Assembly: GCF_001194135.2 (NCBI RefSeq)
Contig: NC_068988.1
Location: 92,261,539 to 92,325,538, forward strand
DNA length: 64,000 nt
From: Octopus bimaculoides
Lineage: Eukaryota
Direction: 5' to 3'
Positions 5,131 to 32,451 of this stretch are shown here, one piece after another. The notes under the pieces were generated by a model, which worked only from the letters and a program-made list of their open reading frames with translations, did not search any database and had not been told where the DNA came from. Numbering within the stretch: position 1 is the first letter of the stretch; each line of letters opens with the position of its first letter. A program made the position numbers and the translations under genes.

Positions 5131-5151
5131 GAGTTTAGGCGCCAAAAGTGA

Positions 5152-5241: not shown

Positions 5242-8200
5242 AAACTCATATGGTTTGCTCAGGATGTTTGACTGGCTACCTAGCGATTCGGTTTCGAATC
5301 GCCGCAACAGAGCTTCAGGCAAAATGCCATCTGATATTTTTCACAGCTCTTTTCATGTTCTGATTTCAAATCCTACCGAAATTCTTTCGGGGTCGATAAA
5401 ATAAAGTTACCGGTGAAGGACTTGGATCGATGATATCGGTTAAGACTTCCCTTCAAAATTGCTAGCTTTGTACCTGACTCAGAAACCATTCTTTGATATC
5501 CTTTTGCTCCAGCCTCTTCACAAACGTTTTTTTTTTTCTTTATTAGAAAAAGAGAAATAGGAAAATGTGATGTCCTTTTTTCTTTTTTAGAAAAAAAAGG
5601 TAAGACATTGGTGATATAAGAGAAGCTGTTTCAGCTGAGGTCGGAGACTAGTTTTTCTTTGGGAACTAACGGCCTCAGCATTGCTTTTACTGCTGCTATT
5701 ACTTATGATAATGATGATGATGTAAGAACAAGAACAGTTATGTCTTTTCAACTAGGCGCATAGAAGTATAACCGTTTGATCTCAGTAATAACTTAACCCC
5801 AGCGAGATTTGAACTCATACAACACGAGGCCACAAAACCTCGAGAAGCAAGAGAAGGAAAGAAAAAGGGAGTATTCACATGGCTGCTGTTGTGCGAGAGA
5901 AAGAAGGGGGGGAAGTAAACCAGAAGCGGGAGACTGGTGGATAGGTGAGAGAAGACAGGTGAATGTAGGAAACGGTGATGTGAGAGAGCTGTGTGGGGGG
6001 GGGAGAGAAAGAGTGAAGAACATGGGGGAAGGAAAAAAGGATGTGAGAAGGAGAAGGTGGGGGGAGAAGTAATAAGGTAAGAAAGATTTAAAGCTGCGAT
6101 GGAGCTCTAAATCGCAAACACTGCCGCCTTTCTCCTCTTCTACCTCCTCCTACTCCTCGCACACACGCACGTACGCACGCGCGCACACACATACACACAC
6201 CCAAACCTCCGTTACACATGGAAAGTGGTTTATTTTCCTTCCTGATAAGTTCCAACTCCTTGCTAAATTCCACCAAATTTAACCAATCAACATTGAGTTT
6301 CAAACATTTTCCTGTTCTCTCTGCTACTTTCTTCTCTTTGTTTTCTACTGTCGTCTTTTTTTCTTTTTTAATTATTTCATCCCCCCACCCCCACCCACTT
6401 CTCCTACCGTTTCTCTCCTCTCAGCCTGTACTGAGCAGCAAGAATGTTTTCCATTTCTCGTTATTCATTTATATTTCGCCTGTATTCTTCTCTCATTTTT
6501 TTCCCTACCTCTTTCATTCTCATCATAACAATTATTTCATTCTCTCATTTTATTTTCATCTTTCTTCCTTCCAACACTTTTATCTTGCTTTTTCTTCTTT
6601 TTTTTTTTCTTTCATATCATTTAACTCTCGCATAATTTTCGTCCCTAATTCATTCTCTCATTCCTAATTCCCGTCATCTCTCTTTCATCCCACAATTTTT
6701 GTATGAAATATCAGTCTTTCCACTACTAACATAACCGCTGCTCATCTATTTTGTTCTTGTTAATATTGCATCTGTAAGAAATGAGTCGCAACATATCTAC
6801 TTCAGTCTCATTTTTCATCAACTAATTTGTGTTCCCTTTGTTTAATTCTTTCTCGTCTTTCACCACATGTCTGTCTGTCCTCCCTTGTCTTAACATCATT
6901 TTTCTCTTTTATAATTCAGATACATTGTTTACATCATACGCGCATATCCATCCATCCGTGTGCGTGTGTGTGCTTTATTTCAGTCGAGTCAGTCTCTTAG
7001 TTCTCTGAGTTTCGCTTGTGGAACTTGCCTGGTGACCCCTGTGTACCCATAGGCAAAACTCAAGAGTAGCAAGAGACTCACTGTACTCAAAATAAAACGT
7101 TACTAGTCTCTGTTATGATATTGAGTATTCTTGCTTCCGACAGTCGAATGTGTGTGTGTTGCATATCTTATTGCATTGTGCAGTATTAACGTAAAATAAA
7201 ATCCATTCCAGTTGGGAAATTGAAACCAAGCCAGTGGTCTAGAAGTTATCGCTGCACTACCGCTTGACAGATGCACCCGGCAGTGTCCATCGGTGCACAC
7301 GTATTTAAGTAAACCTACAGTCGAACCTTCTTCCAAAGTTGGTCTTTTAAACATGCATAATTTTGTGGCTCTCAGACCCAGTTACCCAGCGTATCATCTT
7401 TTCATCTCCATTAAATCATTTTTGACAAAAACTATTGTTCCACATCCTATCTATGTAGATTCATTATCCTTCACTAGAAATTCTATCCTCCGAGCAGTTT
7501 TCTCTAAGTTTCTGTGATATTTTATCTTTTACTTATTTTCATGATTGGACTGCGGTCATAATAAGGCATTAAAAAGTTTAGTCAAACAAATCGATCCCAG
7601 CAATTTATTTCTTTTTTGTAAGCCCGGTACATATTCTACCGGTCTTTTTTTTTTTTTTTACCAAACCGCTAAGTTACGGGAACGTAAGCAATGGTGGATG
7701 ACACACACAAATTTATAACCGACAGTTTTCTTTTCGGTTTCCGCTTGCCAAACCCACTGACAAGGCTTTGGTCCGCCCATAGCTATAGTAGAAAATACTT
7801 AACCAAAGTACGATGCTGTAGGACTGAACCCGGATCTATGTGGTTGGGAAGCGAACTTCTTATCACACAACCACGCCTGCATCTAATTATTCGAATTATC
7901 CACTTGACATTATAATGATTTTATAATCTGATCTAGAACAACCCGTGGGGGGGGGGGGTATTTGTCACCAGCTATATAAATTCACAGGTTTTCGGCCTGC
8001 AACTAGTTTGATAAGTGCCAACTCTCGGATCTTGAGTCATTCTTACTTCTGCTAAATATTAATAAAAAAAAAACACACATATACTCATATTTTGAGTTCT
8101 ATTTTTCCTGTTTGCGTCAACATACTTGTCCGTATGTATGTGATAGGACGACATTGTCCAGTGTATTTTTTCTTTAAGATAGTAAAGAGTGAATTTGCTG

Positions 8201-8486
8201 GAAATTTGCAATTTAGCTGCTGTTACTAGTAGGTTGAGCAACTGCATAATGATCTCTTGTTAAGCTCAAAGTAAACGTTACTGTTTTTAAGCTCTATATC
8301 AGCCCTGATTGAACAGAATTGATCTTTGGCTTTAAAACATGATGCAAGGAGTCCCAGCTATGGCTGAGCCGTCTTTTTGTATATCAGGAACTATACTGTA
8401 CAAAATATCCTTTGACATTATTATGATTTTATATGATCTAGAACAACCCAGAAGGAAAAATATTTGTCACCAGCTATATAAATTCA

Positions 8487-8625
8487 CAGAAGTAAGAATG
8501 ACTCAAAGGACGTGACCAGAATGCTTACAACATTCTAGGCTAGTAAAGGTACCGAAGCGCCTCTTTTCATGAAAGTTGTGCGGAGATTTTCGACCTGCAA
8601 CTAGTTTGAGTCATTCTTACTTCTG
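8487..8625. mobile_element. Small MITE with perfect 21-bp TIRs
   Basis: cagaagtaagaatgactcaaa / tttgagtcattcttacttctg. A deleted copy lies at ~7985-8051 and an inverted internal piece at ~9706-9783. Confidence 0.8.
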
Positions 8626-10799
8626 TTAAATATTAATAAAAATACACATATATTCATATTTTGAGTTCTGTTCTTTCGGTTGACTATGTAGAAAACCCTT
8701 GTTGAATACGAAGACCTGCTGACTGACATACATTGAGTCGCCTTTTAGGAGGGAAAATGTTTAGTGGCAAGACGATACTCTTGTCTGCTAGAGAACCTCT
8801 GTATCTGTCTGTCTCTCAACTTCTTTCTTTCAATTACAATTTCATTCTGTTGGAGAAAGAGCTGGTGCCGTATAAAGTATTTGATTTACTTCTGTATTTC
8901 ATTGTCGGAAAGCGGCGAGCTGGCAGAATCGTTAGCGTGTCGGAAATAAAATGCTTAGCCGGTATTTCTTTCAGTTCTTGACGTTCTGAGTTCAGATTTC
9001 AACTTTGCCTTTCATCCTTTTAGGGGTCGATACAATTGGTATCAGTGAAGCATTGCGGTTGATGTAATCGTCTTACTCGCTCCCCTAAAATTGCTCGCCT
9101 CGTACGAAAACTTGAAACAATTATTTCAATGTAAGAAGCCGTATGAGTTATTGGAGGGTATGAAAGATGGTGAGATGAACTGGCAGTGTCTTGATTGCAT
9201 ACATTGATATACTTACATACGTTCCATTGTAACAAGGATTCTTTAACCCGTATTTCCCGTATCACTGTCTTTACGCGACAGAAAGTCCTTTTGATTATAG
9301 ATTTGTTTGTTCAGAGCTAACCTGGTATAGAAGACAGTGGCAACAATAACACACACTCCACACTAACATCTCATTTTATGAACATCCTTCGTACTCCATA
9401 TATTGTTTTACCTTTCTTTTTATATATTATCTCATAATCGCTATAACTTTACTTGACTACTCGTTCAGATGTTTAGTAATTCACTCAGCACTCACACTCA
9501 CACTCACAACATACAGCTTAGGGAATATGTTACTTTTTAAATAAACGCTCAACATTACAAACACACCAATAAATAATACACGTGTGCCATCAAAAATATT
9601 TTGAAAATATACGGACATTGACGAGGCAGACTTTACTATATACACCCACACGCACACACCACAAACTTCATTTTCTGTACCTGGGTCTCAACTACTGCCC
9701 ATAATTTCGCACAACTTTCATGAAAAGAGGCGCTTCGGTACCTTTAATAGCCTAGAATGTTGCAAGCATTCCGGTAACGTCCTCATCTTTTCGTCACATA
9801 TCACCTTCCACCCCAATCAAGGCGAAGGCTGTCCGTAATCCTCTGACAAGGTTATCATTAGTGTTTCTAATTTAAGTAACAATTTAGGAAAGCGAGGTCA
9901 GACAATTACATCGACCCAATACTTGACCGGCATGTTATTTTACAGATCCTGGTGAGATGAAATGTAAAGCTGACCTTATCAAGATCTGAACTTAGAACAT
10001 AGAGCTGGAAGTAACCGCGAGGCATTTTGCCCGACTTTTTAACGATTTTACCAATCCACCATCTATTAAAATATCATAATGGCACGCATGTACCAAACAA
10101 GACTTCACAAGAAAAGCTGGATTTGTTTTCAGAACTAGAAAACCAGTCTTCAACAGCAGTGGCATTACAGTCTACAAAAGTATAAACACGTTATATACAG
10201 GAGAACCACTAAATATTTCACGTGTAATGGGACATTATTCTGTCGAAAGTACATATTCAAGCCGTCTACCTGATCTTTCTTAACATCACAAACACAAGGC
10301 CTTCCATTGGTCGCTTTGGCCAATAAAAGAACCGCTGTATGGTTGTTTGATGTTAGAAATAGCAGTCATACCTCATTCAACTGACATCCGACCAGCTTGG
10401 AAAATGAGATTTGTTTGAATAAACAATGCCCGAAAACAGAACAGGATGACCATGGTTCGAGAGTCTATACTAACGTCAGTGACCTACTCTATCACTCAGT
10501 TCTTCTTCCCAACTCATTAAGCAGAAAATAGTTTTAAATTAAGAAGAACACAAAGAAAATGATAGAATACAAAAGTGATTGGGGTGGTGTTATTTAGCTC
10601 CGAGTCAACCCTTACTGATGGTTGGAATAACGATGCCCGGAGCTAAATAACAATACCACACCAACCAATACTTTATACTAACTTACCATTACACACCACT
10701 CAACACATCAACTCAATATGCCGCATCACTCAACACTTTACAAGCCATCACCATGCACCACCACTCACTAAAGTACTTTCATTCCTCAACTGTAGAGAA

Positions 10800-12266
10800 A
10801 CTACACATTCTCACAACATTCTTTCCTTCTCCTTCTTCTCCATTTTCATCCTCTATCTTTCTTACGTTTTCTTTCTATCTAATTTTGTCTTCCTTTCTTC
10901 CCACTTCTCTACTGTAACTCACTCTCTTTCTCTTCCACTCGTTATTATCCTTTTATATGTCTTTTTCTCCTCTCTCTCTCTCTTCTCTCATACCATTTTA
11001 TTTCTCTCATTCTGATTCACTTTTACTCTTTCCTCCTCCCTTGTACTTGTTTTTTTTTTTTTTTTGGCTCTTCCATCATACATACTTCCTCCCGCCGCAA
11101 ACTTTACCTCTTACTCTTCTCCTCCCTCTCTAGTCTTACTATCTCTTTGTCACTCCTCTACCTTCTTAATCAATACGTCTCTCTACTCTTTACATCTGTC
11201 TCCTCCATTGATTTCCTTCCAATCTGCTGCCTTTTGCTTCCCCTACGCTCTCCTTCCACCCCGGCTCTTTCCCCTCTCACCAGCCTCCTTCCTCCACATT
11301 GTTCTGTCTCCCCTTCACTCAACCTCTATATTCAGCTACCATCTCTTTCCTCCGTAACCATTCACCACTTACTCTTTCTCTCACCCTCATCCTCCCTCCG
11401 TTTTCCACATCTCCATTCCTTCTTCTTTACTTCCCCACTGCCGTAACACTTTATTTCTGGAATTAGTTTCAATTTTATTTTTGTTTTCCTAATTTTGCAC
11501 AGCATCAATACGTACGAGAACGGCATGAACGACACCACAACATCCTACATATCAAACCATTCTTTTCTTCCAGTTTGATCTATAATAGTTTTAACTTCCC
11601 TGATCGGACGAGAACCACCTTCTCCCCTCTTTTTTACACTCACCCTATCCTATTTATTTCATTCCTTTTCTCTCTTTTTCCTCCACATTTTCGTCCTTTT
11701 TTCTGTCTTTAATCTAGCTTGCATTTCCTCTCCCTCTTCAGCTATTCACTTACTCTCTCTCTCTCTCTCTTCTTGTTTTATTCCCCCTCCCCATTAATAC
11801 CACTCCTCCACTCGAATACCCTTCTTGCCGCCCCTCAAATTGTTCTGAGTCTTCTTTACGTCTATCGCCTTCCCCTCTTATACTCTTTCTTACCACTATC
11901 TTCCTCTAGTTCTTTACTCACACCTACTCCTCTCTTATTTTCTTTCCCCTCACTCATCTTTGTACATTTCCTCTATATCTCCCTCTCTCAGTTCTCTTAC
12001 CCTTTCTTTTCTCCTATTCAACTCTGTTCAATCAGTCTTTATTACCCCTCCCCCCTCTGTTTCCTCTCTCTCTCCTCCTCCTCTCGCTACTCAGTATTAC
12101 CCTTCTCAGTGCCTCTGTACCCTCAATGTACCCGACGTCGTGCTGTTTCCTATATACCCCACGCTGTGCTTATAAACCCTCCCCACCTTCACTCGAATAC
12201 GCTACAACAGTTCTGGGGTTACATCGTTACTGTTGTAATGGTGGTGGTGACGACGACGGTAGTGTT

Positions 12267-12305
<39 letters not shown>

Positions 12306-12709
12306 TTGGTGTTGGTGATGCAGCAACATGAATAGTGATTGTGGTGTTGGTAGATTTTATACTTTTGTTGCAGCTACTGTTGTTTATGACTTTCTCAATT
12401 GGCGACGGTGGTCGTAGTAGTAGCAGTAGTAATAGCGATAGCAGTTATAACAGTAGTGGTGATGATGTAGCAACAGTAGTGGATTCAGTCGCTGATTTTT
12501 CAGTTACTGTTTGTCTATATCATAAACGTCTTTATAATCTATAATAGTAGTATTAGTGCTAGCAGTAGTACGTCGCCATGTAACGATGGTGGTGACGATT
12601 ACTGCTGCTTTTAGACTAGATTAGTAATAGTTGGAATAGTATATGTATATATATGCGGTGCCCCAGCATGGCCACAGCTCATGAGCTGAAACTGGATAAA
12701 ATAAAATGA

Positions 12710-12749
<40 letters not shown>

Positions 12750-13800
12750 CGTACACACACATTTATGGTTGGTGCTGTTTATGTTGTAGTAGTGATGGTG
12801 GTGGTGGTGATGGTCAAGCATGTATATTTGTTACTACTGTAAATTGTTTTCTTCTTCACCCTGGAGTAAGGTCTCTATCTACCCAGAGTAACTTCTCTTT
12901 CTCTCTCTCTCCACTCCGGGGTAACACATCACTCACGAAGAAGCAAACGAGGAAACTTCTACGTGTTCACTCGAGCCGATGAGAAATCGCCAAAATCTTC
13001 CTCTTATCATACTCTCTACCTCTAAAATAAAAAGGTACATATTGAACAATATAGTCCTGAAGTACACTGGACAACAAAAAAAAGTATGCCTTTGATTACA
13101 AGCCTGCTTAATCAGGGCTCACCTGAATTTAAACTCTCTCTTTCTCTCCATAGAGAGTAACACATTTCAGCTTTTCGTTCTACCCAGAGTAATAGGTCTC
13201 ACACACTCACGCTTTCTTTTTCTTTCCACACACAACAGTCTTTTCTCACCCGGAGTATCACATCTTTCACTCTCCCTCTCTCGCTACTAACTCATCATCA
13301 TCATCGTCGTCATACTCAACATTCATCCCTTCCTCACTCAGTATTCTTTACTCCTACCACCTCCAGTATAGCAGTATACTACTACTACTACTGTAGCTGT
13401 ACTACATCTAATACTACTGATTTCTCCTCATACCTCAACCACATCAAGCTAACACTCTCACTTTCACTCTTTACTCATATTCCCCTCCTCGCATCACCTC
13501 CAGCCAACCCATAATATTTCCTCACTCAAATACTCTTTTTTCTTTATTCTCTCTCATACTACTACTCTCTCTTTCTCCTATTCATTTCCTCACTCTCACT
13601 ATAACTTCTCCTTCCGTAACACTTATTCAGCCACCATGCTACATCTCTGACATTCCACCCCCACCCATCGACCATCTCTACCATACCGATATTTCTCCCA
13701 CCGCAACTTCCCTCGTATGTTTCTCTCTACACTCACTTTTACTCTCCCCACTTTCACTCCCTACTCTCATTACTCCAACTACTCCCCCCCCTTCAGAAGC
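10800..13800. repeat. Pyrimidine-rich low-complexity tracts and (GTA)n/(GGT)n microsatellites
   Basis: CT-rich degenerate sequence; (GTA)n 12266-12302. Similar tracts at 6200-6900, 19760-20030, 20520-20830, 21260-21600 and 41650-42450. Confidence 0.9.
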
Positions 13801-16721
13801 AACAGTAAAGGTGAGATAGGGGTACACTAGAGGGAGTTCAATGTTAATTGTTTCAAAGTTTGCTAATGTTCAGTTACTACTTCTTTCTATATTGCCTAAG
13901 TGATTGTTTCTTGTTAGTTGTACCTTTCTTCTGAGTTCAAATCTTGTCCAAGCAGAATTTTTTTTGTACATCATAAGCAAGGATTAAAAAAATAGCATCT
14001 ACCAATATTCGTGGACCTCTGAGTTTATCAGTCGTACACCCCAACTTTTGACTTGGTTAATAGCGACGCTGGCTTCTTTCCACTAGTGTTGCTGATTACT
14101 TCTCTCCAAGTTTCAAAATCACTATTTTTAGTTGTGTATAGTTTAATGTGACTTCCACAGTTGAGCACTAATTTTTAGTGGTGGTGGTCGTGGCTGTAGC
14201 TTTGTTATGCTCATGATATTTATGATTCATTATTTTTTATATAGGTAAAGCTCATTTTATTAATTTTGTCACTATAAGTATAACAGCAAATTCATTTAGT
14301 TGTAGTGGTGGTTATTTCTTGTAATGCTCTTTCAGAATCCCTTATGAAATGGTAACTGGACAGTTTCGTTGTCTCTTGCTCAGTGTATGATGTCCTATCT
14401 GGAAGAATTAATCACACACGCACACATATTTATGCATCTTTCACCTTTTACTTATTTCAGTCATTCGAACTGCAACCATGCCGAGGCACCGCATCACACA
14501 CATAATGAGTTTAAAGGGATATAATATCCTGGTTTTACCGTCTTTTCTCTCAAATCTGTTTCAGATGCCGGCTAACCACAACGATCCGTATGTAGTGCTC
14601 GAGCTAACAATGGGCTGTTAGGCCCTGGTCACTTCTCTCATTGGGTAATTTTGTGTCTTGCTCCGGACTACGATTATCTTATAGACTTCATTTGCTTACA
14701 GCTGTTTCCAATGTAAAATGCAGTGGAGTGCCTGAGTAACACTTTACAGTTTTATCAGCCTCACGGTCGAGACTATAGATTGTAAAGGTGTAATATTGCA
14801 GTAATGTAATTTAAAAAATGCTTTATAACTATTAAGCACTGTCGTATTGCTGATGATTGGGTTCTCGGAACTACTCGTGCCGTATTCCACTTTAATGTTT
14901 TATTTTCCGCTTGTCTTCCTTCAACTGCCAGCATTTTTGCTTCCTTTGGCAAAATAAACAGTTAATATGAAGACAGTGTAAAGGAAAGCTGTCAATCTTC
15001 TCGGTCAACCGATATAAGAGAACTTCTTTGTATGCTCGATCTGCTAGAAATAGTAACTAATTTTCTCTTAAATTACACCCGACCGTCTTCAATATCGAAG
15101 GATGCCTCAAGCAAAAACGAAAGAGCCTCTACGTGATCAGGTGAACTGCTATAAATAGCAGTCAGATTTCCCTCAGATTACATTGCGTTTTGAAAAAGAG
15201 AAGTTAATCGTATAGACGCATGGTACGTGTATATATGAATGTAACATCAGCATTCTTTCAGTTAATGATCACAAATTGAGAGGGTTGACACGATCTGGCA
15301 ATGTCACCTCTTCTTAAAATAAAATTTTCGTGGACTTCTACGAAATCACGATCTTGCTTTTAAAAAAATTTATCATTCAAATATTTAATTCCCTTTCGAA
15401 TCAAATTTTTTTTTAAAATTAATTTCAGTGGTGAGTGCTTTCCACTTTGAAATTGTGATCTTAAGCCGAAAGAATACAGCGTGTGTGTGTGTGTGTAGAC
15501 ATGTGTAACAACATTGGAAGTAGTCCTCAGAATCGTTGGAAACCGGACTAAATTTATGAAATGACTCAAGCATGGAGCACTTGCAATCAGGACTCGGAGT
15601 TTCTCGATAGCACTTTAAATTCCTGTCGTTCTTATCGATATTAGTGACGGGAGCCCCATATCTGGACAATCCACGCGCCAACACCGCGTGGCCTCTCTCG
15701 CTGGGAATGCTCTTTTCCCCCTTTCTCTTCTCCCTTTACCAGTTTCCTCTGGTCTTTCCTCATCTTTACCAACTATCTGAGAAGGACAATATCTGAATCT
15801 TTATAGCCATTAATTCGTTTCCTTCTCTCGCGCGTCAAACTAATATCATTGCTTGTCACCTTATCTCGTCTTATACTTTTATACTTCACTTGCTTCAGCC
15901 ATTGGGTTGCGGCCATGCTGGGGTACCACCGTGAAGGGCTTAGTCGAATAAATCGACCTCAGTACTTATCTTTTCAGTCTTGTTCTTATTGCTTTTCTTT
16001 TTGTCTTTTTTTGCCTATCTGTTGAGTCATGGGGACGTTAACCAACATGGTTGTCAAGTGATGTGGGGAACACACACACACACACAACGGACTCCCAGTT
16101 TCGTCTTCTAAATTCACACACAAGACAATCAGTGATCAGTCCAAAGTTAAAAGCAGAAAACGCTTGCTTGCAGTGAGCAAGTCACTCCTACTATAAGCCT
16201 GAGTTGACCAATTCCTTGAGTGAATTCAGTTGACAGAAAGTGTGGGAACCTATGTTGATGTATTTTTTTTTCCATTGCTCCCCTACACATACGCACATTA
16301 TTACACAATCCGCCGTAACCTTCGGTCTTCCAGACGGTAGGACATAATTTGAATGAGATATGGCTACTATGTGTAGCAGTTCAAGCAACTACACAGAAGC
16401 CCCCACATTGGACCATGTTGGAGTTGTAATATTCGGAAGGAAACTGGGCGGAGAAAACGGTTACTTAGCAAGACTGACAGATGAGAGCCTATGGCTATGA
16501 TGAAAACAGTGGACACAGGTAAATTGAAAAAGAAATGGTTATGGTTGTGTGGTCATAACACGTTTATGCACGTGCGTGTGTGTGTGAGTGAGTTTGTGAG
16601 TGTGCGTGTGTTAGCTTAATCATTGTGTTTTTGTACTTGATAGATATTACTTAGTACGTCATCAGTGTAGATATATTTCAGCTACTTTACAGCCATGAGC
16701 CACCAACAGTGTCCCTAAAGC

Positions 16722-16866
16722 CAGTCATGAGCAACCGGCGATCCGTATGACACTGAATGGCATGCCCAACGAAATATTACCTTGAATTTCTTTTAGTAGT
16801 GCGGCCTCCCTAATGATGAACTATATCTCATGTGGCCCGCTTCTCCAAAAATGTTACCCATGCCTG
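16722..16866. mobile_element. hAT-type MITE (old)
   Basis: cagtcatgagcaac / gttacccatgcctg TIRs; degenerate 8-bp TA-centred flanks. Confidence 0.55.
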
Positions 16867-17947
16867 CTCTAAGCTATCACTCGTGTTGCCTACTTGAAGC
16901 AGAAACTAAATTTCTCTTTACGTACATTACCTTATTGCCTGTAAAAGAAAGATATAAAGCATATTGGTCACGGTACTCATAGGTATATAAAAATATAGGA
17001 TGGTTACGGCTGGAATCCCATTGATCATATGTCTACTCGGACCAGATTCACATGCGGGCCAAACATGAACGACTGCAACCACAAACTCATTCTTACTATG
17101 TTATTGTGAAATTTACGTGTGAACTCGCAAACTTTATTTCTATGGCCGGGTTTCAACACTCATCTTCTCCATACACATATTCTACTTATATAACTATGTG
17201 AAACCTATTGATTATAGGACTGAATTCAGATAATATTGTAATACACTTGTATTTCTCGAAAATGTTAGCGGTATAGGCGAAACGATTTCTGCTAAGATTC
17301 GAACTACTGACTTAAGCTCATTGAAAATTTATCGCCGTATCGTATTGACCAATTCTCATATGCAAGCACTATGGTGGCTAGAAACTCCAAATCAAGACAT
17401 TTGTGGTCTTGTATTAATTAATCAGTGCTGCCATAGCAGTTACATCAATATAGTTATTACAATTATAGGTGGTTGATCTGTTAACGTCATCTTCTGTAGT
17501 TGCTGTCTATAAAGCTTATTTATTCTGGTAGGCTGTTGTTTAGCCCTAGGTCAAGTATTTGTTGTGACCATTTCGTCTTTCTCTGTATCTAAAATGACAC
17601 TGAGCCGGTTGAGTGGACAAAATGCCTTTCAGTATTTGTTCAATATCTTTTCGATCTGAGTTCAATTCCTACTGAAGTTTATTTCGTTTTTCATCATTCC
17701 AGAGCATCTACTGTGTTGATAACGCCTACTAGGACAGAAACACTTGTCCGTAGCTGTTCTCTTTCTTGTCTCCAGACAATCAGACTGCCAATTTTGGAAA
17801 ATTCTTCATTCCTGAGATTATCACCCTTTTTCATTTAGAGTTAGTCCCAAATTCCACCACCAAACGATTATTTTACCCTCTTTGGGTGCGGAGACAATTT
17901 CAATAATCCAAGTAGAATATATTTTTTATGGTATTTGATATACTCTT

Positions 17948-18002
<55 letters not shown>

Positions 18003-18320
18003 GAATTTACAGAAGGGAGAAACAACAAGCAGGTGTATTAGTTTGACGCTCGGGAAGAATGGAAAAGTCTTTGACGTTTTGAGTCTATGCTCTTCGACAG
18101 AAAGGATTGGGAGGGAAAAAGAGAAAGAACGAGAAAAAATGAAGTGAAAAAGTGTGTGGGGATTAACGGTTCAACATGATGACCATCCCTGTCGACAGGC
18201 CACTGTTATTTATAGTGTTAAACACTTTCGGTATGCAAATTAGGTTCATAGAGTAACTGCTGCATTTGTTGAGTATATAAACAGTTTGGCTGCTTGTTTC
18301 TCTGCAGACTGTGAGAATGA

Positions 18321-18400
18321 CGTAGACGCCTCTGATGAGAACCCAATATGGTTTGAAAATCGATTAAGGTTATTCATCATTCTTGTTTTATCAGTCTACG
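18321..18400 (+). ncRNA. Putative minimal type-I hammerhead ribozyme, probably in a Penelope-like pLTR remnant (~18200-18420)
   Basis: Helix I gcct(18328-31)/aggt(18367-70). Core CTGATGA (18332-38). Helix II gaacc/ggttt with loop caatat. GAAA (18355-58). Palindromic helix III AATCGATT. UUA cleavage triplet ending 18366. Distal helix CGTAGAC(18321-27)/GTCTACG(18394-400). Confidence 0.7.
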
Positions 18401-19459
18401 GAGAAATGGCTAAAATTTGCTCTCACCAGTGACAAAGGAAACATGGAAGTGGTATCACGATCTGCTAGAAATTGCAGCCAAGGTATGTTCTATATACTCC
18501 TAAAATGGCGGTATAGTCGTGGCTGGAATGAATGGCTTTTGATCGTAGGCATGCTCATTCAAGGCGGACCTGACAAAATCTAAAATATCTAGCAGGTATA
18601 ACAATGTTCTGTACACCATAGGTTATTGTTTAGTCCCAGATCTTCTCTTATTGAGAAGTCTTGTGACGAACGCGTTCCAACAGTGAATATCCTGTCTTTT
18701 TTTTTCAGGTATAAGTGTATCTATGTGTTTCAGGTGTTTGTGTATCTATTATCAAATGTGTCCTTCGTCTATTATGCTAGTAGATTTAAGATTTGGCAGC
18801 TATATTTAATAGTAAAGCGACCGCATAGATCACGCATGAACGACCTATATCGAGTAGCGGGAGATCTGGTTCATCGTCCAGCGGACCGCAAGTTGCCCAC
18901 GACTGGCATAGAAGTTTATTCGTTGGCTCACTGCGGATAGCTAACTATATCAGTGGTTGTCACTTCGCTGCGATGTCTCCCTTACAGTTGGAATTCAGCC
19001 CCACCACCACCACCACCACCATTCTTTGCCTCTGTCAGTGTCGTTATCAGACCGCCAATATTGAGCTCGGTGAGTTGGCAGAACCGTGAATGCTTAGCGG
19101 CATTTCGACTTTACGATCTGAGTTCAAATGCCGCCGAGTCAATTTTGCCTTTCATCTTTTCGGGGTCGGTGTAATCGACTTACCACCTCCCTTCGAAATT
19201 GCTGGCCTTGAGCCAAAATTTGAAACCAATATTTTGTGTCACTAGTGAGTAGTTTCGACCTCATCATACGCCTTACGTGAAATAGAAGTAAAATTTCTAT
19301 AAAATCACATCCTTCTTAAAAGAAAGGGATAAAGAGATAAAGACGAGGTGCTTATAGCCGTAATAACTTAGATCATAGGTCTGTTTGATCAGGGTTAAAT
19401 AACAGTAATATCTACATTATATACATGGTTAAATATCGAGTCAACGCTTGAAGCCTCTG

Positions 19460-19645
19460 TGGTTGCTAGGTTTGTAAGAAATAGTAGCTTAATCTCCTTC
19501 AAGTCATACCCCATCTTTAATAAAATAAAAACAGAAGGTACAAAGGATAAGGTAGTTGTAGATACACTGTGTCTGATAATCATAGCAGGAATGCCTTTCA
19601 TATCATAGATCTGTTCGATCATAGCTAACCTGGGGCTAAACGACA
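19460..19645 (+). mobile_element. SINE-like family E fragment (other pieces at ~1-100, 8300-8410, 15030-15230, 16860-17080, 18440-18600, 61250-61430, 63805-64000)
   Basis: Recurrent ctagaaatagcagccaaat..ggaatgcctttgatcatag.tctg.tcgatca..gctgacctggggctaaac motif. Confidence 0.65.
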
Positions 19646-20048
19646 TCGTGCGAATTTACACACAGATCGGTTACAGCAAGTACACATATACACTCGCTCT
19701 TAAACCGATATACGTGCGCGCACATACTCACGCACTGTGATATTTTTATCTCCATCTATTAAAGAGTGTTCTTCCTTCACTATTCTACGTTTCAGTTAAT
19801 TTCTCCTTTATTTCATCTTTCTTTCTTCTGTTCTATCCAACCTCCGTTAGCTCACCTCCACTTCTCTTCTCTATCTTTACTCTCATCCTTTGCTCTATCT
19901 TTTTTCTTTACTCTCCCCATCCCCCTTCTCATTCTCTTTCCTCCCTCACTTATTTCGAAATTAGCAATTCTTTCTATTCTCTCTCTTTCATTCATCCTTT
20001 GTCTTCCTCACATCCTTCCAACCTCTCCAGTTATTATTATTATTATTG

Positions 20049-20470
20049 AGGCGGTGAGCTGGCAGAAGTGTTAGCACTCCGGACAAAGATGATTAGCAGC
20101 ATTTCGTCCGGTTTTACGTTCTGAGTTCAGATTCTGCCGAGGTCGACTTTGTCTTTCATCCTTTCGGAGTCGATAAATTCAGTAAGCCAAACTCTGGAGT
20201 CGTAATCAACTAACCCCCTTCCCCTAAACTTTCAGACCTTCTGCCTATAATAGAAAGGATTATTAAGGTGGCGAGCTGGCAGAATCGTTAGCAAGCCGGA
20301 CGAAATACTTAGCGGCATCTCTTCCGGCTCGTTACGTTTCGAGTTCAAACTTTACCGTGATCAACTTTGCCTTTCCTCCTTTCGGAGTCAATGAAATAAG
20401 TGCCAGTTAAATACTGGCTTCGATGTAATCGACTTGCCCCCTCCCTCAAAATTTCAGGCCTTGCCCCGAT
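20049..20470 (+). mobile_element. Tandem pair of tRNA-derived SINE family B (other copies ~1293-1480, 2610-2830 -, 5300-5490, 8915-9135, 9880-10050 -, 19073-19230, 36625-36830, 44020-44200 -, 53715-54180 -)
   Basis: ggcgagctggcagaatcgttagc..ttctgagttcaaat..gtcgactttgcctttcatcctttcgg..gtaatcgactt recurs throughout the window. Confidence 0.9.
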
Positions 20471-20833
20471 AGTTGTTATGGTCCTTTCGATCCGTCTGCT
20501 GCAAAACGATTTTCTCGTTGTTCTCTAGATACTCGTTCTCAATCTTTTTATATGTACATTCTCCTCTGTCCATCCCTCTCCTCCTATGAATACCTCCCTG
20601 TCTCTATCTAATTCCCTTCTCATTTAGTCTATTCCTTCTTCCCTCCATCTCTACACCCATTCTTTCTTTATCCTATCTCCATTTCATTTACACTTTCATT
20701 TTCTATCCTCTTCCCGTTATTGCAACTCACATTTCTTCTTCATTTTCTCCCCTACTACCCCTTGAAATATCCCCTCCCGTCTCTAATCTACAGTTCACTC
20801 TGACACTACCTACAACCCCTTTTTGGTCCAGAT

Positions 20834-21248
20834 GGACTATATGTAATCTGAACCTTTCCCCCCTTATTTTTTTTATTATTTTTACGGAATCCCACGTTTT
20901 AGGCTATGGAGATTCCGATTCTGAAAATTTTTTTTCAAAAATCTCAATTTCAAAATTTCGATTCCCCCCCCCCGGGTTTTATATAGATCCACAGGATAAA
21001 CCTAACCCTAACCCTGACCGTAACCCTGACCATAACCCTAACCCTAAACCTAACCCTAACACTAGTTTTGTGAAATTTGGCTGTTATTTCTAGCATGTAA
21101 ATAGCCTGCTTGGTGGGAGGGGGGGGGGGTGAAATTTTTCAAACAATTTTTTTTCAGAATCGGAATCTCCATAGCCTAAAACGTGGGATTCCGTAAAAAA
21201 AAAAAATTAATAAATAAGGGGGGGAAAGGTTCAGATTACATATAGTCC
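20834..21248. mobile_element. MITE with ~100-bp TIRs and a central (CCCTAA)-like array
   Basis: ggactatatgtaatctgaacctttcccccc...ttacggaatcccacgttttaggctatggagattccgattctgaaa is repeated in inverse at 21145-21248. About ten CCCTAA-like units at 21000-21060. No clean TSD found. Confidence 0.85.
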
Positions 21249-22870: not shown

Positions 22871-23950
22871 TTTCAGAGTGGCCTACCTCCCGAAAATGTT
22901 GATCGTATTATAAATTTCTAACTAAATAATTCAATTTCGCATTAATATCTGGTCCCAGATGGATAGAGAGGGAGGAGTAAATAGTGAGAGAGAGAGAGAA
23001 TAGTTTTAGGTCATCCTATAAACAGTGCAGTTTTTTAATACTTCTTTTATTTTTCAAAATTAAGATAAACAAAGTTATTTTTTTAATCTAAAATATACAC
23101 TCCTTCATTTTCTACAATGCTCTTCAATCTATCTGATAGACTTGCAAGGCCTCTCTTCCAAAATTCACTTGTCTGTGACAAAAAATCTCCAGTACTGTTC
23201 TGATATTGAAACCAAAGATGGTCGTTTTTCTTCTAGCGCTGACTTAAGCCACTCAAGCTGCTCTTGGTTTGGGTTTAAAAGTTCAAAGTGGACTAAACCT
23301 TTTGTATCCCACCAAACAGAAAGCAACACCTTACATGGGTGAAGACCTTTAGCCTGGGGTGCCAGTGTTTCTCCTTTCCCTACCCACTGTCTTCGGCACA
23401 TGACATTTTTATAGAGAACTCATTTCTTGTCACCAGTCACTATTCAGTCCAATAAAGGTTCATTCGTGAGATGTAACTGCAAAGAAGAGCACACATTCCC
23501 TCTCTGCGCACGATTTGACTTGGAAAGTTTGTGAGGAACCCATTGACCCAATTTGCTGACTTTTCTGATGGCATGCGGGTGTCGATGAATGGTTGAATGA
23601 CCAAATCCAAGCTTCTCTGCTAGTTCCTCAAAGTTACGATGGGATTTTGTTCCACCAGGATTTGCAGGACGTCCTTGTCAAGCTCTACAGATCTTCCAGG
23701 ACGAGGCTTGGCTTCTAGGCTGTAGTTCCTGGTTTGGAATTTCTGGAAACACCATTGACACTAGCTTATGCTTTTTACGATCCCCATGTACTGCATTAAT
23801 ATTCCTCGCACTTTCCATTGTGTTGTTGCCTTTATTGAACTCATAAAGCAAAATATGCCGAATATGCCCCTTTGTCACTTCCTTTATAACTTTGAAAAAA
23901 TAACTGTTAAAATCGAACAGCACTCTTCAAAACTTGCACTAAGAATAAGT

Positions 23951-24869
23951 AATTTTTAATCACCCACAAGGGGCTGCCATAGAGGGGACAACACAAAAAC
24001 ATGGGGACACATAACACGAAAAAAATTAAATTAAAAATAAAATTGAAAATATGGTAACATGCATGATACATGAAAATGAAACATGAAAATGAGCTGCTTG
24101 CCCCACCTCAAGCAGCAACACTGACTTCCTTCTGAATCCCGAGTCCTTCAAAACATCCAATCTGAACTTTTCTCTCAGTTTCTCATATCCTACTTTTACT
24201 GGTATCCTTTTCAGGTTCACATCAATCTTCCAATATTTATAACCTTTTTTATATTTTGCAATCACTTCCTTCTGGCTCTGAGACACCAGCACACACATGT
24301 GCCAACCCACAACATTAGTATATCCCTCCACATCCACAAATTTTGCTGTCTTCCACCTTGTTACCTCAGCTATTTTCATGGGGGGGGTGGAATTTTGTGT
24401 ATCTTGTGATGTCTGTTTCCCTCCTTTTTTTTTCATTGTGAAGGCAGGGAATGGGTGGGTTTGGTGTCGGTGGGGAGAGGGTGGGTCTGAGAGGTTATGG
24501 GTGGGGTGGGGATGGCTTGGGGTTCTGCATCACACTGTCCTTTCTTCCTTTTTTTCCTTCCTTCTGCCACTGTCCATAATCCTTTTTCCTTTCTTCCATC
24601 TGTACCATTTTTTGATGTTCTTCCATTTTAGACAAGTCTATTTTATTCCTTTTTAACTCCATTACTTCAGCGAAGCTCTTTTTTGTTTTCCAAGACACCT
24701 GTCCATTCTGTTACTGCCTTTACTAATTCCTCCTCTGAAGTGGACAATTCCAACCCACTAGCCATCGCTATCTCTCTTGAAACAGCGACTAAGCACAACT
24801 GGTAAACTGCTGCAAAGCTGCACAAAAATCAACACTTCAGTACAACTCAATACACGTTAAAAAAATACG
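23951..24869 (-). mobile_element. Same retroelement family, copy 1 (most of ORF1 deleted, ORF2 open)
   Basis: Its ORF1 N-terminus (LSTSEEELVKAV..KKSFAEV) matches copy 2 (LSSSEEELIRAV..KKSFAKV) and is fused to the ORF1 C-terminal tail. Same C-rich spacer, open ORF 24436-24026 and same 3' end. Flanked by identical 19-bp repeats at 23932-23950 and 24870-24888. Confidence 0.8.
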
Positions 24870-24888
24870 ACTTGCACTAAGAATAAGT

Positions 24889-26653
24889 TGATTTTTTATT
24901 ACCCACAAGGGGCCAACGAAGAGGGGACAATGCAAACATATATGGGAACATATAAAAATGAAAAAAAAAAAATAAATAAATAAATAAACGTATGATATAC
25001 ATGAATGATACAATGAAAATGATAATGAAAATGAGCTACTTGCCCCACCTCAAGCAGCCTCACTTGCTTCCTTTTATCTTTTAAATTCCGAGTCCTTTTA
25101 AATGTTTATACCATATTTCTCGGTCAGCTCCTTGTACTTTATATTGTCTGGTATCATCTTTAAATCACAATTCACCTTCCAACAATTATAACTCCTCTTG
25201 AATTTCAATATTTCATCTTTTTGGCTTTCAGACACCAGGACACATGAGTGCTATCCATCAATGTTTGTCCATCCTATGATCTGGACAAATCTTGCAGTCT
25301 TCCATTTTGTTATCTTATTGAGCAGTTCCTTGTCCACACCTTCAACCTTCATTCACACGAAACAATTTTCAGTGGGAGGGGGAGTTTGTTGATCCTTGTG
25401 TGTTTGTATTTCTTTTTTTCTCTTGCTTTATGTTGGAGAGGAATAGGTGGGTTTGGTGTCTGTGGGGGGAGGGTGGGTCAGAGAGGGTATGGGTGGGGTG
25501 GGTATGGTTTAGGGTTCTACTTCACTCTGTCCTTTCTTCCTTCAGCTACCATCCACTGTTCTTCGCTTCTCTTTTCTTCCTGTTGCACCTTTGGCTCCTT
25601 TCCAACTTCCTCCTGACTTCTCTGCTTCTGTAGAGGGCAGTGTGCTCTAATGTGACCTTTTTGGCTACATTTAAAGCAATGAGGGGTTCTACCCTCCACC
25701 CACACTCTCAACACTACATCTCCAATGGTCACCGTTTCCACCACATTTTCCAGTGTTTCTGCAGTGCTCTGTATGATCAGGTCCAATGTTTGGCTTTTCC
25801 ATACTGAATTTTCTATTTTCATGGCTTGGAGGACAGCTATTTCTTCTTTACTTCCAAGAAGAACAGTCGCCACAACCCAATCCACATCTATTTCTGGTGG
25901 GATTCCTTCCACCCCAATCCTGAAAGTCCTTCTTCCAAGATAAGTGGGTAGACGGACTTTACTGTGGTTACTGCGTGTTCTTTTGCTTTTCCTTCTGACT
26001 TGAAATGAACCACAATTGTTCCATATCTGCTTCCTCTGGCAAGATATGTTATGTCTTGCCAGATGGAGAACAAAGCCTTTTCTATTATTTCTGCCTCAAC
26101 ATTTTCAATTTTCCTTTCTTCCACTGAGTACACCTTATATATTACTGTTTTCTTATCCATTTCTTCCAATACTTTCTGTGGCAGTGACAACTTAATGTCA
26201 CCACCTATCCTACATGCTATTTTCTTGTATTTCTCCATGTTTGTCAGGTCCACCTCCTTTTTTGTGACTTCTGTCACTTTTGCAAAACTTTTCTTCCTTA
26301 AGCACTTGTCCATTCTATCAACTGCTCGTATGAGCTCCTCCTCTGAAGAGGACAATTCGGACCCACTAAAGTCCGAATAGAACATATTTCTTACTGTTGA
26401 CATTGCAGACCCTCCTCAAGGTGGAGAGAAAGCACAACCACAAAACTACTGCAAAGCAGCACAACACACTCCTCAACACAACACACTCCTCAACACAACA
26501 CACTCCTCAACACAACACACTCCCCAACACAACACACTCCTCAACACAACACACTCCTCAACACAACACACTCCTCAACACAACACACTCCTCAACACGA
26601 AACAATCCTCAACACAAAACAATCCTCAACACAAAACAATCCTCACAAAACAA
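24889..26653 (-). mobile_element. Short non-autonomous non-LTR-like retroelement, copy 2 (near full length): 17-bp tandem 5' UTR, Gag-like ORF1 with CCHC knuckle, C-rich spacer, small ORF2, 3' tail
   Basis: ORF1 runs 26403 to 25517 with one frameshift near 25940 and ends VWVEGRTPHCFKCSQKGHIRAHCP (CX2CX4HX4C). ORF2 remnant 25310-25074. 3' end ccccttgtgggtaataaaaaat. No RT or endonuclease. Flanked by copies of a 19-bp target sequence. Confidence 0.8.
26461..26646 (-). repeat. 17-bp tandem array (~11 units, CTCCTCAACACAACACA on +) in the 5' UTR of retroelement copy 2
   Basis: Period 17 read directly (ctcct at 26469, 26486 and onward). Units drift to ...aaacaatcctc at the right end. Confidence 0.9.
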
Positions 26654-27019
26654 AGTTGCAGTGACAAAAAGTACAAGGTAAAATTACTACCTTCTTTTAT
26701 AGTAAGTTGATACAAGTAGTTTATCCTGTCCCCCTCTGAATTTTAGATCATGCATTATTTATGGGATGACCCAATATAAGAGACATCCAAGCGCTATAAC
26801 AAATGTAAAGAATTCACTCTTGTGGTACAATATTTGTCGGATCTTTGCAATGCCTATTTTCAAAATAAATAAATTAATTGAATTGCATGGTTTTGATATC
26901 TGTACACATTATGTGGCATCTGAGGTGGAGAGTAACACATCCATTGGCTGAAGTTCTGTGAACTGACAGTGATGACTGAAACCGAGCCAGAATAAGAAAA
27001 AGAGGAATTGTACAAAGTG

Positions 27020-31781: not shown

Positions 31782-32451
31782 TCAGGTCATCCCATAAGTT
31801 CTGTCTGATTTTACCTTTTTTTAAAATTGAATGAAATTTAATAGTATTTTAGAATGTCTAATGGAATTAGCTCAACCACAACCGAGAAGGGAACTTCACG
31901 GAAAAAAGGTTCTTCTCTCTATCTGGTGGGATTGCAAAGGAGTAATTCACTTAGAATTGTTACCGCCTAATGCAACAATCAATGCTCAAGTGTACTGTCA
32001 GCAATTAGAGCGTTTGAACCAAGTTTTGAAGAAAAAAAGACCTGCTTTAGTGTATCGGGAAAGGAGTGATGTTTCATCAGGACAATGTGCAACCCCATAC
32101 TGCAAAGATCACATAACAGAAGATTGAAGAGCTTGGTTGGGAAAAAATTCCTCATCCACCTTATTCTCCTGACCTTGCTCCTTCAGACTACCATTTGTTT
32201 TGTAGTTTACAGAATCATTTGGGGGACATAATTTTGCAAGCCAGGAGGAGGTCGAAACTGACATTTCAGAGTTCTTCACTTTGAAACCAAAAGAGTTTTA
32301 CATTCATGGGATTAAAAAGCTTCTAAATAGATGGAAGGAAGTCATAGATAATCAGGGAAAGTACATTGATGATTAAATTTCAATTAAATATAACATTTGA
32401 TCACTTGTTTTCTTTATTCAAAATTCGGACAGAACTTATGGGATGACCTGA
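31782..32451 (+). mobile_element. Mariner transposon, internally deleted (C-terminal DD34D half retained)
   Basis: Near-perfect ~30-bp TIRs (tcaggtcatcccataagttctgtc...) with TA on both sides. Translates to KKVLLSIWWDCKGVIH, HQDNVQPH and PYSPDLAPSDYHLF. Confidence 0.95.

What the first reader, a model, noticed from the sequence alone, without database searches (positions are those of the whole stretch)
23932..26774. Two diverged retroelements stacked at one 19-bp site inside a mariner: candidate sequence-specific parasite of a DNA transposon
Seen: the mariner TIRs (23006 and 26774) bracket the whole block. On the element strand the order is mariner 5' end, T', copy 2, T, copy 1, T, mariner ORF. 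T is acttattcttagtgcaagt; the copies at 23932-23950 and 24870-24888 are 19/19 identical, and T' at 26654-26672 matches 14/19. Copies 1 and 2 are strongly diverged (ORF2 only about half identical), so this is not a simple tandem duplication. Inference: two sequential insertions at exactly the same target. Copy 2 would be older (decayed TSD) and copy 1 younger (perfect TSD). Established precedent: Tx1-clade LINEs are often target-specific, and Xenopus Tx1L/Tx2L insert into DNA transposons. These units have no RT or endonuclease, so targeting would have to come in trans from an unseen autonomous partner.
Basis: partly seen in the sequence, partly recalled or inferred. Interest (0 to 1): 0.85.

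Follow-up and report, generated by a model that had tools for sequence, protein, structure and literature searches.

The report
Two LINE relics stacked in a mariner
An old mariner transposon in an octopus genome was hit twice at the same nucleotide by two non-autonomous relatives of an L1-type LINE, which looks like this LINE family's habit of stacking on its own copies rather than a parasite that recognises the mariner.

Summary
A decayed mariner (minus strand, 23006-26774) is split in its 5' UTR by two diverged ORF1-only retroelements. The order is T' - copy 2 - T - copy 1 - T. Both T copies are 19/19 identical and T' matches 14/19.

Four "empty" copies of the same mariner family carry exactly one T next to the same upstream sequence. 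T is therefore native mariner DNA and a genuine target-site duplication. Two sequential insertions at one site, copy 2 first, are supported.

The "sequence-specific parasite of a mariner" reading is not supported:
- Eight insertion events of this family, in four octopus sequences, use seven unrelated targets with duplications of about 10-19 bp.
- The family stacks head-to-tail elsewhere without any mariner. O. sinensis has at least five diverged members in a row, two of them with duplications lying exactly at a neighbour's boundary. O. vulgaris has at least three full-length units.

The missing autonomous partner exists. It is a 5.3-kb LINE with the same 3' tail, and its ORF2 (APE + RT + zf-RVT) is closest to human L1 ORF2p.

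The pattern fits the published "double insertion" model of tandem transposon dimers. Genome-wide flank counts could not be run.

The parts
26673..26774 (-). Mariner 5' end: terminal inverted repeat plus the first part of the 5' UTR (sequence X, ending ...TTTACCTTGT). The TA flank lies at 26775-26776.
   Evidence: Aligns with the 5' ends of four other copies of the same mariner family. TIR match.
26654..26672 (-). T': left copy of the target-site duplication made by copy 2. It matches T at 14/19, with 5 derived changes.
   Evidence: Sits exactly where the empty mariner copies have T after X. Significance.
24889..26653 (-). Copy 2: 1765-nt non-autonomous LINE derivative. It has a 5' UTR with a tandem array, ORF1, a decayed small ORF, and the 3' tail ...GGCCCCTTGTGGGTAATAAAAAATCA.
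   Evidence: ORF1 is 50% identical to O. bimaculoides LOC106871568. A 79% identical copy is on L029.
26460..26645 (-). 17-bp tandem repeat, 10.9 units, in the 5' UTR of copy 2.
   Evidence: Tandem Repeats Finder score 316, 96% matches. Also family D1.
25517..26403 (-). ORF1 of copy 2: 295 codons, one frameshift near 25900, no stop codon. The CCHC zinc knuckle is at 25637-25678.
   Evidence: zf-CCHC, E=0.015. The profile search found 687 relatives, the top ones from Octopus and Argonauta.
24870..24888 (-). T (middle): right duplication copy of copy 2, re-used as the left duplication copy of copy 1.
   Evidence: 19/19 identical to 23932-23950.
23951..24869 (-). Copy 1: 919-nt internally deleted family member. 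It keeps the ORF1 N-terminus joined to the ORF1 C-terminal end, an intact 136-aa ORF at 24026-24436, and the 3' tail ...AGCCCCTTGTGGGTGATTAAAAATT.
   Evidence: Its 5' start CGTATTTTT resembles those of L001a and L030-u2.
23932..23950 (-). T (right): right duplication copy of copy 1. It is native mariner 5' UTR sequence, starting 45 nt upstream of the transposase start codon position.
   Evidence: Contiguous with the mariner in empty copies: TCTTATTCTTAGTGCAAGT in L004/L005.
23006..23931 (-). Rest of the mariner: remainder of the 5' UTR, the transposase pseudogene (start codon ATG mutated to AAG, frameshifts, internal deletion) and the 3' inverted repeat.
   Evidence: Pfam HTH_48 + Transposase_1. 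86-89% nt identity to L002-L005.

Best explanation
This is a 'double insertion' tandem dimer made by target-primed reverse transcription.

Events:
1. A mariner copy received copy 2 in its 5' UTR. The first nick fell between ...CCTTGT and ACTTATT, and the second nick 19-21 bp downstream. T was therefore duplicated on both sides of copy 2.
2. The right-hand T, now sitting directly behind copy 2's A-rich 3' tail, kept the target half-site and the whole second-nick context.
3. A later insertion of a different family member (copy 1) nicked at the tail|T boundary and again 19 bp downstream. This duplicated T once more.

Both copies are ORF1-only deletion derivatives. They would be mobilised in trans by a 5.3-kb L1-superfamily LINE that shares their 3' tail.

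Re-use of the site reflects a family habit of landing exactly at the boundaries of resident family members. It does not reflect recognition of the mariner.

Shown: T is native, single-copy mariner sequence; the order of events; the partner exists; stacks with boundary duplications occur elsewhere.

Inferred: the nick positions; trans-mobilisation; that resident tails or boundaries attract the endonuclease or RNP.
For: - Empty-site proof: in L002-L005, X is followed by one T and then Y.
- Perfect 19/19 duplication around copy 1. T' sits at the predicted position.
- Relatives have their own duplications at unrelated sites in L001: CAGTCCTCGATGCATA 16/16, GGTATTTAACCYAGCT 15/16 and ACACAACMCAGTT 12/13. 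Two of these relatives are 5'-truncated.
- O. sinensis L030 holds u2-u6, all on one strand. The four units that align are 71-89% identical to each other; u2 shows no nucleotide match and is linked by its ORF1 and tail.
- In L030, u2 is flanked by GGATGTGATATAATGA 16/16, which is the first 16 nt of u3. Unit u5 is flanked by GAATACTCGTCAT 13/13, which starts 4 nt after u4's tail (17 nt flush with the tail if one mismatch is allowed).
- O. vulgaris L028 has at least 3 tandem full-length units.
- The partner's tail is 87% identical to copy 2's tail. Its ORF2 has Exo_endo_phos + RVT_1 + zf-RVT, and its best solved-structure match is human L1 ORF2p at 2e-71.
Against: - Only about 120 kb of octopus sequence could be examined, and the loci were found through the family itself. 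Frequencies are therefore unknown.
- No clear nick-site consensus emerges from the eight events; the only pattern is A/T-rich sequence upstream of the nick.
- Two of the L030 boundary events are at 5' ends, not tails. A simple 'A-rich tail attracts the endonuclease' rule is therefore incomplete.
- T' carries 5 private changes while both T copies carry none (about p=0.03 for the split). This is unexpected if copy 2 is young.
- The mariner X|T junction resembles the LINE's own 5' end (p about 0.01), which hints at some sequence recognition.
Confidence: 0.62

Rival explanations
1. True sequence-specific targeting. The partner endonuclease recognises the 19-bp T site, or X|T, in this mariner family's 5' UTR. 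This would mirror Tx1L, which inserts in Tx1D in Xenopus, and copies 1 and 2 would be two independent homing events.
For: - Two diverged elements share identical first-nick positions and second-nick positions within 0-2 nt.
- The partner belongs to the L1 superfamily, which contains the target-specific Tx1 clade (PMC4640811; PMC1950540).
- T is conserved in the mariner family across hosts.
- There is a T-like 16/19 gapped match upstream of the copy-2-like element on L029 (p about 0.01-0.03).
Against: - Six further insertion events use six different targets, and none is in a mariner.
- L001b carries the same tail clade as copies 1 and 2 but lies in a SINE head.
- Duplication lengths vary from about 10 to 19 bp.
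- The same family stacks without any T in L028 and L030.
- The T-like match on L029 is 475 nt from the alignable element and not at a defined junction.
Confidence: 0.1
2. Self-homing. The family's endonuclease or RNP recognises sequence at the ends of its own copies (the tail and/or the 5' terminus). On this view the mariner site was first hit because it mimics such an end, and arrays then grow by repeated homing.
For: - Four of the eight events lie exactly at a resident element's boundary: window copy 1 and L030 u2, u3 and u5.
- SINE-SINE abutment at L030 649/650.
- The mariner junction TTACCTTGT|ACTTATTC resembles the L028 5' end TTACTTTG-ACTTATTC; 33 of 3000 shuffles score as well.
- The mariner's GGTAGTAAT is a 9-mer shared with the u4 tail, although this match is not significant on its own.
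Against: - The similarity tests are post hoc and borderline.
- Boundary targets differ in sequence (tail|T, tail|5'-truncated unit, flank|5' end).
- The L028 junctions have no duplication and could come from unequal crossing-over or template jumping.
- L001 a, b and c are not at family boundaries.
Confidence: 0.2
3. The tandem did not arise by two insertions here. It arose by recombination: unequal crossing-over or gene conversion between two mariner copies, each carrying one element. Alternatively it arose by tandem duplication followed by divergence, or by RT template jumping between two RNAs in one event.
For: - The near-identical tandem units in L028 (99.6% and 98.4%) show that recombinational amplification probably happens in this family.
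- The L028 junctions lack spacers.
Against: - Copies 1 and 2 are about 68% identical and structurally different, yet the two T copies around copy 1 are 19/19. This rules out an old duplication.
- Template jumping would leave no T between the copies.
- Crossing-over between two occupied mariners itself presupposes two hits at T.
Confidence: 0.05

Closest known systems
Tandem TE dimers formed by double insertion (McGurk & Barbash 2018, Genome Res 28:714; PMC5932611)
   Same: - Two independent elements lie head-to-tail in one orientation.
[quoted passage not shown]
- For non-LTR elements, junctions join an intact 3' end to a variably truncated 5' end.
- The first insertion preserves the target.
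   Different: - Here the two members are different, strongly diverged subfamilies, both non-autonomous.
- The host site is the 5' UTR of a DNA transposon.
- In a related octopus locus the stack reaches five or more diverged members.
Tx1L/Tx2L LINEs inserting in Tx1D/Tx2D DNA transposons of Xenopus laevis (Christensen et al. 2000, as cited in PMC6719617 and PMC1950540)
   Same: - An APE-type LINE of the L1 superfamily is found inside a DNA transposon.
- Its orientation relative to the host element is fixed.
   Different: - Tx1L uses one conserved target in most copies and has a highly specific endonuclease.
- Here the family's other insertions are at unrelated sites and outside mariners.
- Membership of the Tx1 clade was not tested.
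R1 tandem arrays and Drosophila telomeric HeT-A/TART arrays
   Same: Head-to-tail arrays of non-LTR elements are built by consecutive insertions at one place. The telomeric TE arrays and the R1 array are both described in PMC5932611.
   Different: Those arrays depend on a defined target (a 28S rDNA site or the chromosome end). No such common target is evident here.
LINE-SINE partnership through a shared 3' tail (my own knowledge of, for example, the eel UnaL2/UnaSINE1 pair and stringent-type LINEs)
   Same: ORF1-only derivatives, and a SINE with a tRNA-like head (L030 418-649), carry the same ~60-nt 3' tail as the autonomous LINE.
   Different: Trans-mobilisation is inferred from the tail similarity only (87% over 55 nt).

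Membership tests
Non-LTR (LINE-type) retroelement inserted by target-primed reverse transcription | Flanking target-site duplication of variable length that is single-copy at the empty site | tested here: met
   T is 19/19 around copy 1. There is a single T in four empty mariner copies.
Non-LTR (LINE-type) retroelement inserted by target-primed reverse transcription | Conserved 3' end with variable or truncated 5' ends, and no LTRs or TIRs | tested here: met
   The tail CCCCTTGTGGGTRAT... is shared by copies 1 and 2, L001b, and the L028 and L030 units. L001b, L001c and L030-u6 are 5'-truncated. No terminal repeats of the elements appear.
Non-LTR (LINE-type) retroelement inserted by target-primed reverse transcription | Encodes reverse transcriptase and endonuclease | tested here: not met
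   The window copies are 919 and 1765 nt and have no RT or EN signal, so they are non-autonomous. Relatives in L028 encode Exo_endo_phos + RVT_1 + zf-RVT.
Target-specific LINE of the Tx1 type (Tx1L in Tx1D) | Most copies sit at one conserved target sequence | tested here: not met
   Eight events use seven different targets, and only the two window copies are at T. The sample is small and not genome-wide.
Target-specific LINE of the Tx1 type (Tx1L in Tx1D) | RT phylogeny places ORF2 in the Tx1 clade | not tested
   Only superfamily level was reached. Human L1 ORF2p is the best PDB match (2e-71, collinear over 866 aa) and zf-RVT is present. No Tx1 reference sequences were available.
Target-specific LINE of the Tx1 type (Tx1L in Tx1D) | Endonuclease cleaves the target sequence specifically in vitro | not testable with these tools
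   Needs a biochemical assay.
Tandem TE dimer by double insertion | [quoted passage not shown] | tested here: met
   The middle T (24870-24888) lies between the copy 2 tail and the copy 1 5' end.
Tandem TE dimer by double insertion | The two units are independent insertions, not a duplication | tested here: met
   68.5% nt identity and different internal structure.
Tandem TE dimer by double insertion | The family shows insertion-site preference | tested here: inconclusive
   Boundary-precise stacking in L030 and L028 argues for a preference. No nick consensus could be derived from eight sites.
mariner (Tc1/mariner superfamily) | Terminal inverted repeats, TA flanks and a transposase with HTH_48 + DDE domain | tested here: met
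   TIRs agree at about 20/25. TA is present at 26775-26776, but TT stands at the other end. Pfam finds HTH_48 and Transposase_1. The ORF is a pseudogene with an internal deletion.

The most novel reading that the evidence does not exclude
This octopod L1-superfamily LINE, with its non-autonomous ORF1-only and SINE dependants, actively homes to the termini of its own resident copies and so builds head-to-tail stacks of diverged members. The mariner 5' UTR was captured because its X|T junction (TTACCTTGT|ACTTATTC) mimics the LINE's own 5' terminus. This would be a self-targeting, array-building strategy for an APE-type LINE, distinct from targeting of rDNA, telomeres or multicopy genes.
Probability: 0.2. 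Interest if true: 0.6.

Novelty: new member of a known kind. Interest (0 to 1): 0.38.

Why it matters
As originally framed, a LINE that specifically parasitises a mariner would be a second Tx1L/Tx1D-like case and the first in a mollusc. The evidence gathered here does not support that framing.

What remains is a clean, fully dissected example of the double-insertion route to tandem TE dimers, in a cephalopod. The empty site, both duplications and the probable autonomous partner are all identified.

There is also a lead worth following. This family repeatedly lands exactly on the boundaries of its own copies. That is relevant to how TE stacks, and eventually satellite-like arrays, are seeded in the very repeat-rich octopus genomes.

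Tried and rejected
- T as part of the element's own 5' or 3' end. Rejected: local alignments of the T and T' regions to the 5' UTRs of L001a and copy 1 are at chance level, relatives' tails are followed by other flanks, and the empty mariners contain T.
- An alternative copy-2 duplication, ATCAACTTA (26711-26703). Considered, then dropped once the empty sites showed that X runs up to T'.
- Ribozymes. None found at the junctions: no HDV or hammerhead hit in Rfam.
- Homologues of the small ORF. None found. BLASTP against the ORF1 C-termini of P0015, P0027 and L028 was not significant.
- Structure prediction of ORF1 and of the small ORF. Both were unusable (pLDDT 38 and 34), so no fold search was run.
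- PDB profile search with ORF1. It returned only weak CCHC-knuckle hits.
- Metagenome scans. The small-ORF peptide scan found no relatives. The 19-mer tail pattern hit only an unrelated repeat plus random bacterial matches.
- Protein look-ups. Those for P0078, P0028 and P0033 found no contig.
- L029. It gave no definable 5' junction.
Full report
**What is in the window.** The window is cephalopod DNA. ORF1 of the larger retroelement has its only word-index hit in Octopus bimaculoides. That O. bimaculoides locus (L001) shares many interspersed repeats with the window. The profile search's best relatives come from O. sinensis, O. vulgaris, O. bimaculoides and Argonauta.

On the minus strand the order is as follows:
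- mariner 5' inverted repeat and first part of the 5' UTR, 26774-26673
- T', 26672-26654
- copy 2, 26653-24889
- T, 24888-24870
- copy 1, 24869-23951
- T, 23950-23932
- the rest of the mariner, 23931-23006

The mariner identity is firm, with HTH_48 and Transposase_1 hits. It is a pseudogene with an internal deletion.

Copy 2 is 1765 nt. It carries a 17-bp x 10.9 tandem array in its 5' UTR and a 295-codon ORF1 with one frameshift and a CCHC knuckle. It also has a decayed small ORF and an A-rich 3' tail, ...CCCCTTGTGGGTAATAAAAAATCA.

Copy 1 is 919 nt. It is a deletion derivative that joins the ORF1 N-terminus to its C-terminal end. It keeps an intact 136-aa version of the small ORF and ends ...CCCCTTGTGGGTGATTAAAAATT.

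The copies are 68.5% identical over 679 nt. Neither can encode RT or endonuclease.

**Check of the observation.** Both T copies are 19/19 and unique in the window. T' is 14/19. That is unlikely by chance in the 129-nt mariner 5' part (108 of 20000 shuffles).

**The empty-site test.** The mariner protein search returned three short HTH-only proteins from JGI metagenome contigs. Their loci, L002-L005, turned out to hold ~550-bp deletion derivatives of the same mariner family. They are 86-89% identical at the nucleotide level to window 23530-23949.

In all four copies the sequence ...TTACCTTGT is followed by one T-like 19-mer and then TTTGAAGAG. The 19-mer is TCTTATTCTTAGTGCAAGT in L004/L005. L002 and L003 differ from it at 2-3 positions.

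Three conclusions follow:
- T is native, single-copy mariner 5' UTR sequence, starting 45 nt upstream of the start codon.
- T' lies exactly where the left copy of a duplication should lie.
- T is not carried by the retroelements.

Because the middle and right T are identical while T' is diverged, copy 2 inserted first. Copy 1 inserted second, using the right-hand duplicate behind copy 2's tail.

**Is the family specific for T?** Genome-wide BLAST of an octopus assembly was not possible with these tools. Look-ups of ORF1 relatives gave four more octopus sequences, L001, L028, L029 and L030.

In L001 (O. bimaculoides) three tail-bearing copies have their own duplications at unrelated, non-mariner sites:

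| Copy | Length | Duplication | Note |
|---|---|---|---|
| L001c | 142 nt | CAGTCCTCGATGCATA, 16/16 | 5'-truncated |
| L001b | 74 nt | GGTATTTAACCYAGCT, 15/16 | inside a SINE head |
| L001a | 898 nt | ACACAACMCAGTT, 12/13 | ORF1-bearing |

L001b's tail is as close to copy 2's tail as copy 1's tail is.

**The autonomous partner and the stacking habit.** L028 (O. vulgaris) contains at least three head-to-tail units of a 5.28-kb LINE, 98.4-99.6% identical to each other. Each unit has a 503-aa ORF1 of the same family and a 1132-aa ORF2 with Exo_endo_phos, RVT_1 and zf-RVT. The best solved-structure match of ORF2 is human L1 ORF2p, at 2e-71 and collinear over 866 residues. Its 3' tail is 87% identical to copy 2's tail.

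L030 (O. sinensis) is more telling. Five family members lie on one strand, head-to-tail:
- u2, 2495-4185. It is ORF1-only, like the window copies.
- u3, 4186-9332
- u4, 9333-14628
- u5, 14646-19902
- u6, from 19903

The four units that align (u3-u6) are only 71-89% identical to each other, so they are independent insertions. u2 shows no nucleotide match to the others and is tied to the family by its ORF1 and tail.

Unit u2 is flanked by GGATGTGATATAATGA, 16/16. These are the first 16 nt of u3, and u2's own 5' start (GTTCGGTCGTG) matches those of L001a and copy 1. Unit u5 is flanked by GAATACTCGTCAT, 13/13, or 17 with one mismatch. This sequence starts 4 nt after u4's tail, or flush with it in the 17-nt reading. 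That geometry matches copy 1 behind copy 2.

A SINE with a tRNA-like head at L030 418-649 ends in the same tail. It is itself directly followed by a 5'-truncated SINE.

**Interpretation.** The window arrangement is one instance of a family habit. New copies land exactly on the boundaries of resident copies. Where the new copy lands on the old duplication, that duplication is copied again.

This is the 'double insertion' mechanism described for Drosophila TEs. [quoted passage not shown] Non-LTR dimers join an intact tail to a variably truncated 5' end (PMC5932611).

After copy 2 inserted, the right-hand T kept the duplication-side half of the first-nick site and the entire second-nick context. 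Once the first nick recurs at the tail|T boundary, an identical 19-bp duplication is the expected outcome. LINE endonucleases that are not strictly sequence-specific still show nicking hot spots (PMC1635306).

**Against mariner specificity.** Eight events use seven different targets. Duplication lengths run from about 10 to 19 bp. No common motif appears beyond A/T-rich sequence upstream of the nick. Stacks occur without any mariner. The Tx1L/Tx1D precedent is real (PMC6719617 and PMC1950540), but its defining feature, one conserved target, was tested here on a small sample and not met.

**What remains unexplained.**
- T' carries five private changes, four of them transversions, while both T copies carry none. 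The mariner as a whole is only 7-11% from its family consensus, and copy 2's ORF1 has no stop codon. Simple decay is a marginal explanation (p about 0.01-0.05). Error-prone repair at the 5' junction is a guess.
- The mariner junction TTACCTTGT|ACTTATTC resembles the 5' terminus of the L028 LINE, TTACTTTG-ACTTATTC. Only 33 of 3000 shuffles score as well, but the test is post hoc.
- A gapped 16/19 T-like match lies 475 nt upstream of the copy-2-like element on L029 (p about 0.01-0.03).

Together these observations keep alive a self-homing or partial-recognition reading, at roughly 20-30% combined.

**Verdict.** Same-site sequential insertion is confirmed, including by the empty-site test. The 'sequence-specific parasite of a DNA transposon' reading is not supported. 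The case is a new example of a known kind of event, with a family-level stacking behaviour that deserves a genome-wide count.

Noticed in passing
L002 2848-3416, L003 2843-3398, L004/L005 2830-3400 (JGI samples 3300007188, 3300002938, 3300002931): ~550-bp MITE-like deletion derivatives of the same mariner family lie on metagenome contigs. They are 86-89% identical at the nucleotide level to the window copy. The contigs share no other repeat with the octopus sequences and have different GC contents (32-34% and 43.5%). Possible horizontal spread of this mariner between hosts.
   Followed up: partly
L028 447-13026 (O. vulgaris OX597840.1): At least three tandem full-length units of a 5.28-kb L1-superfamily LINE. 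Unit A has an uninterrupted 1132-aa ORF2 and a 503-aa ORF1. The units abut tail-to-head with no spacer. This may be a recently active element amplified by recombination or by template jumping.
   Followed up: partly
L030 418-830 (O. sinensis CM016867.1): A SINE with a tRNA-like head ends in the same 3' tail as the LINE family. It is directly followed by a 5'-truncated SINE that begins at the same head position (GGTATTT) as the duplication of L001b.
   Followed up: partly
window 26654-26672: T' has 5 private substitutions (4 transversions) while both other T copies have none. This is more than expected from the mariner's 7-11% divergence and from copy 2's stop-free ORF1.
   Followed up: partly
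window 26673-26681 + 23943-23950 versus L028 5723-5738: The mariner insertion junction TTACCTTGT|ACTTATTC resembles the extreme 5' end of the autonomous LINE, TTACTTTG-ACTTATTC. The shuffle test gives p about 0.011 and is post hoc.
   Followed up: partly
window 46354-46990 (-): A second, distantly related ORF1 pseudogene of the same protein family, about 30% identical at the protein level, with a CCHC knuckle. Its nearest relative is an O. sinensis protein (P0015). It is followed by an A-rich/(TAA)n run and SINE-like sequence.
   Followed up: partly
window 44385-45390 (+): Fragment of another LINE ORF2, with the C-terminal half of RVT_1 followed by a PHD-like zinc finger (Pfam). It lies on the strand opposite to the neighbouring ORF1 pseudogene and lacks the CCCCTTGTGGGT tail.
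   Followed up: partly
window 31783-32450 (+): A ~670-bp deletion derivative of a different mariner family. Its TIRs are CAGGTCATCCCATAAG, with TA flanks. It retains only the C-terminal half of the transposase and lacks the T region.
   Followed up: yes
L029 440-560 (Logan SRR20902413): A copy-2-like element, 79% identical at the nucleotide level, is preceded by a TATA-like box (CTATTTAAGC) and an Inr-like CATTC about 25 nt downstream. This could be an external promoter of a source copy. The contig is too short to tell.
   Followed up: no
L010-L027 (JGI Ga0126338/Ga0126339 and others): The 19-mer GCCCCTTGTGGGTGATAAA also occurs inside an unrelated, highly repeated element of some other eukaryote in two JGI samples. 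This is a chance match to the LINE tail motif.
   Followed up: yes
L001 9528-12303: Three family members (a, b, c) lie within 3 kb in O. bimaculoides. A reverse-oriented ORF2 fragment of the L028-type LINE lies at 20073-20839. The family appears locally clustered here too.
   Followed up: no
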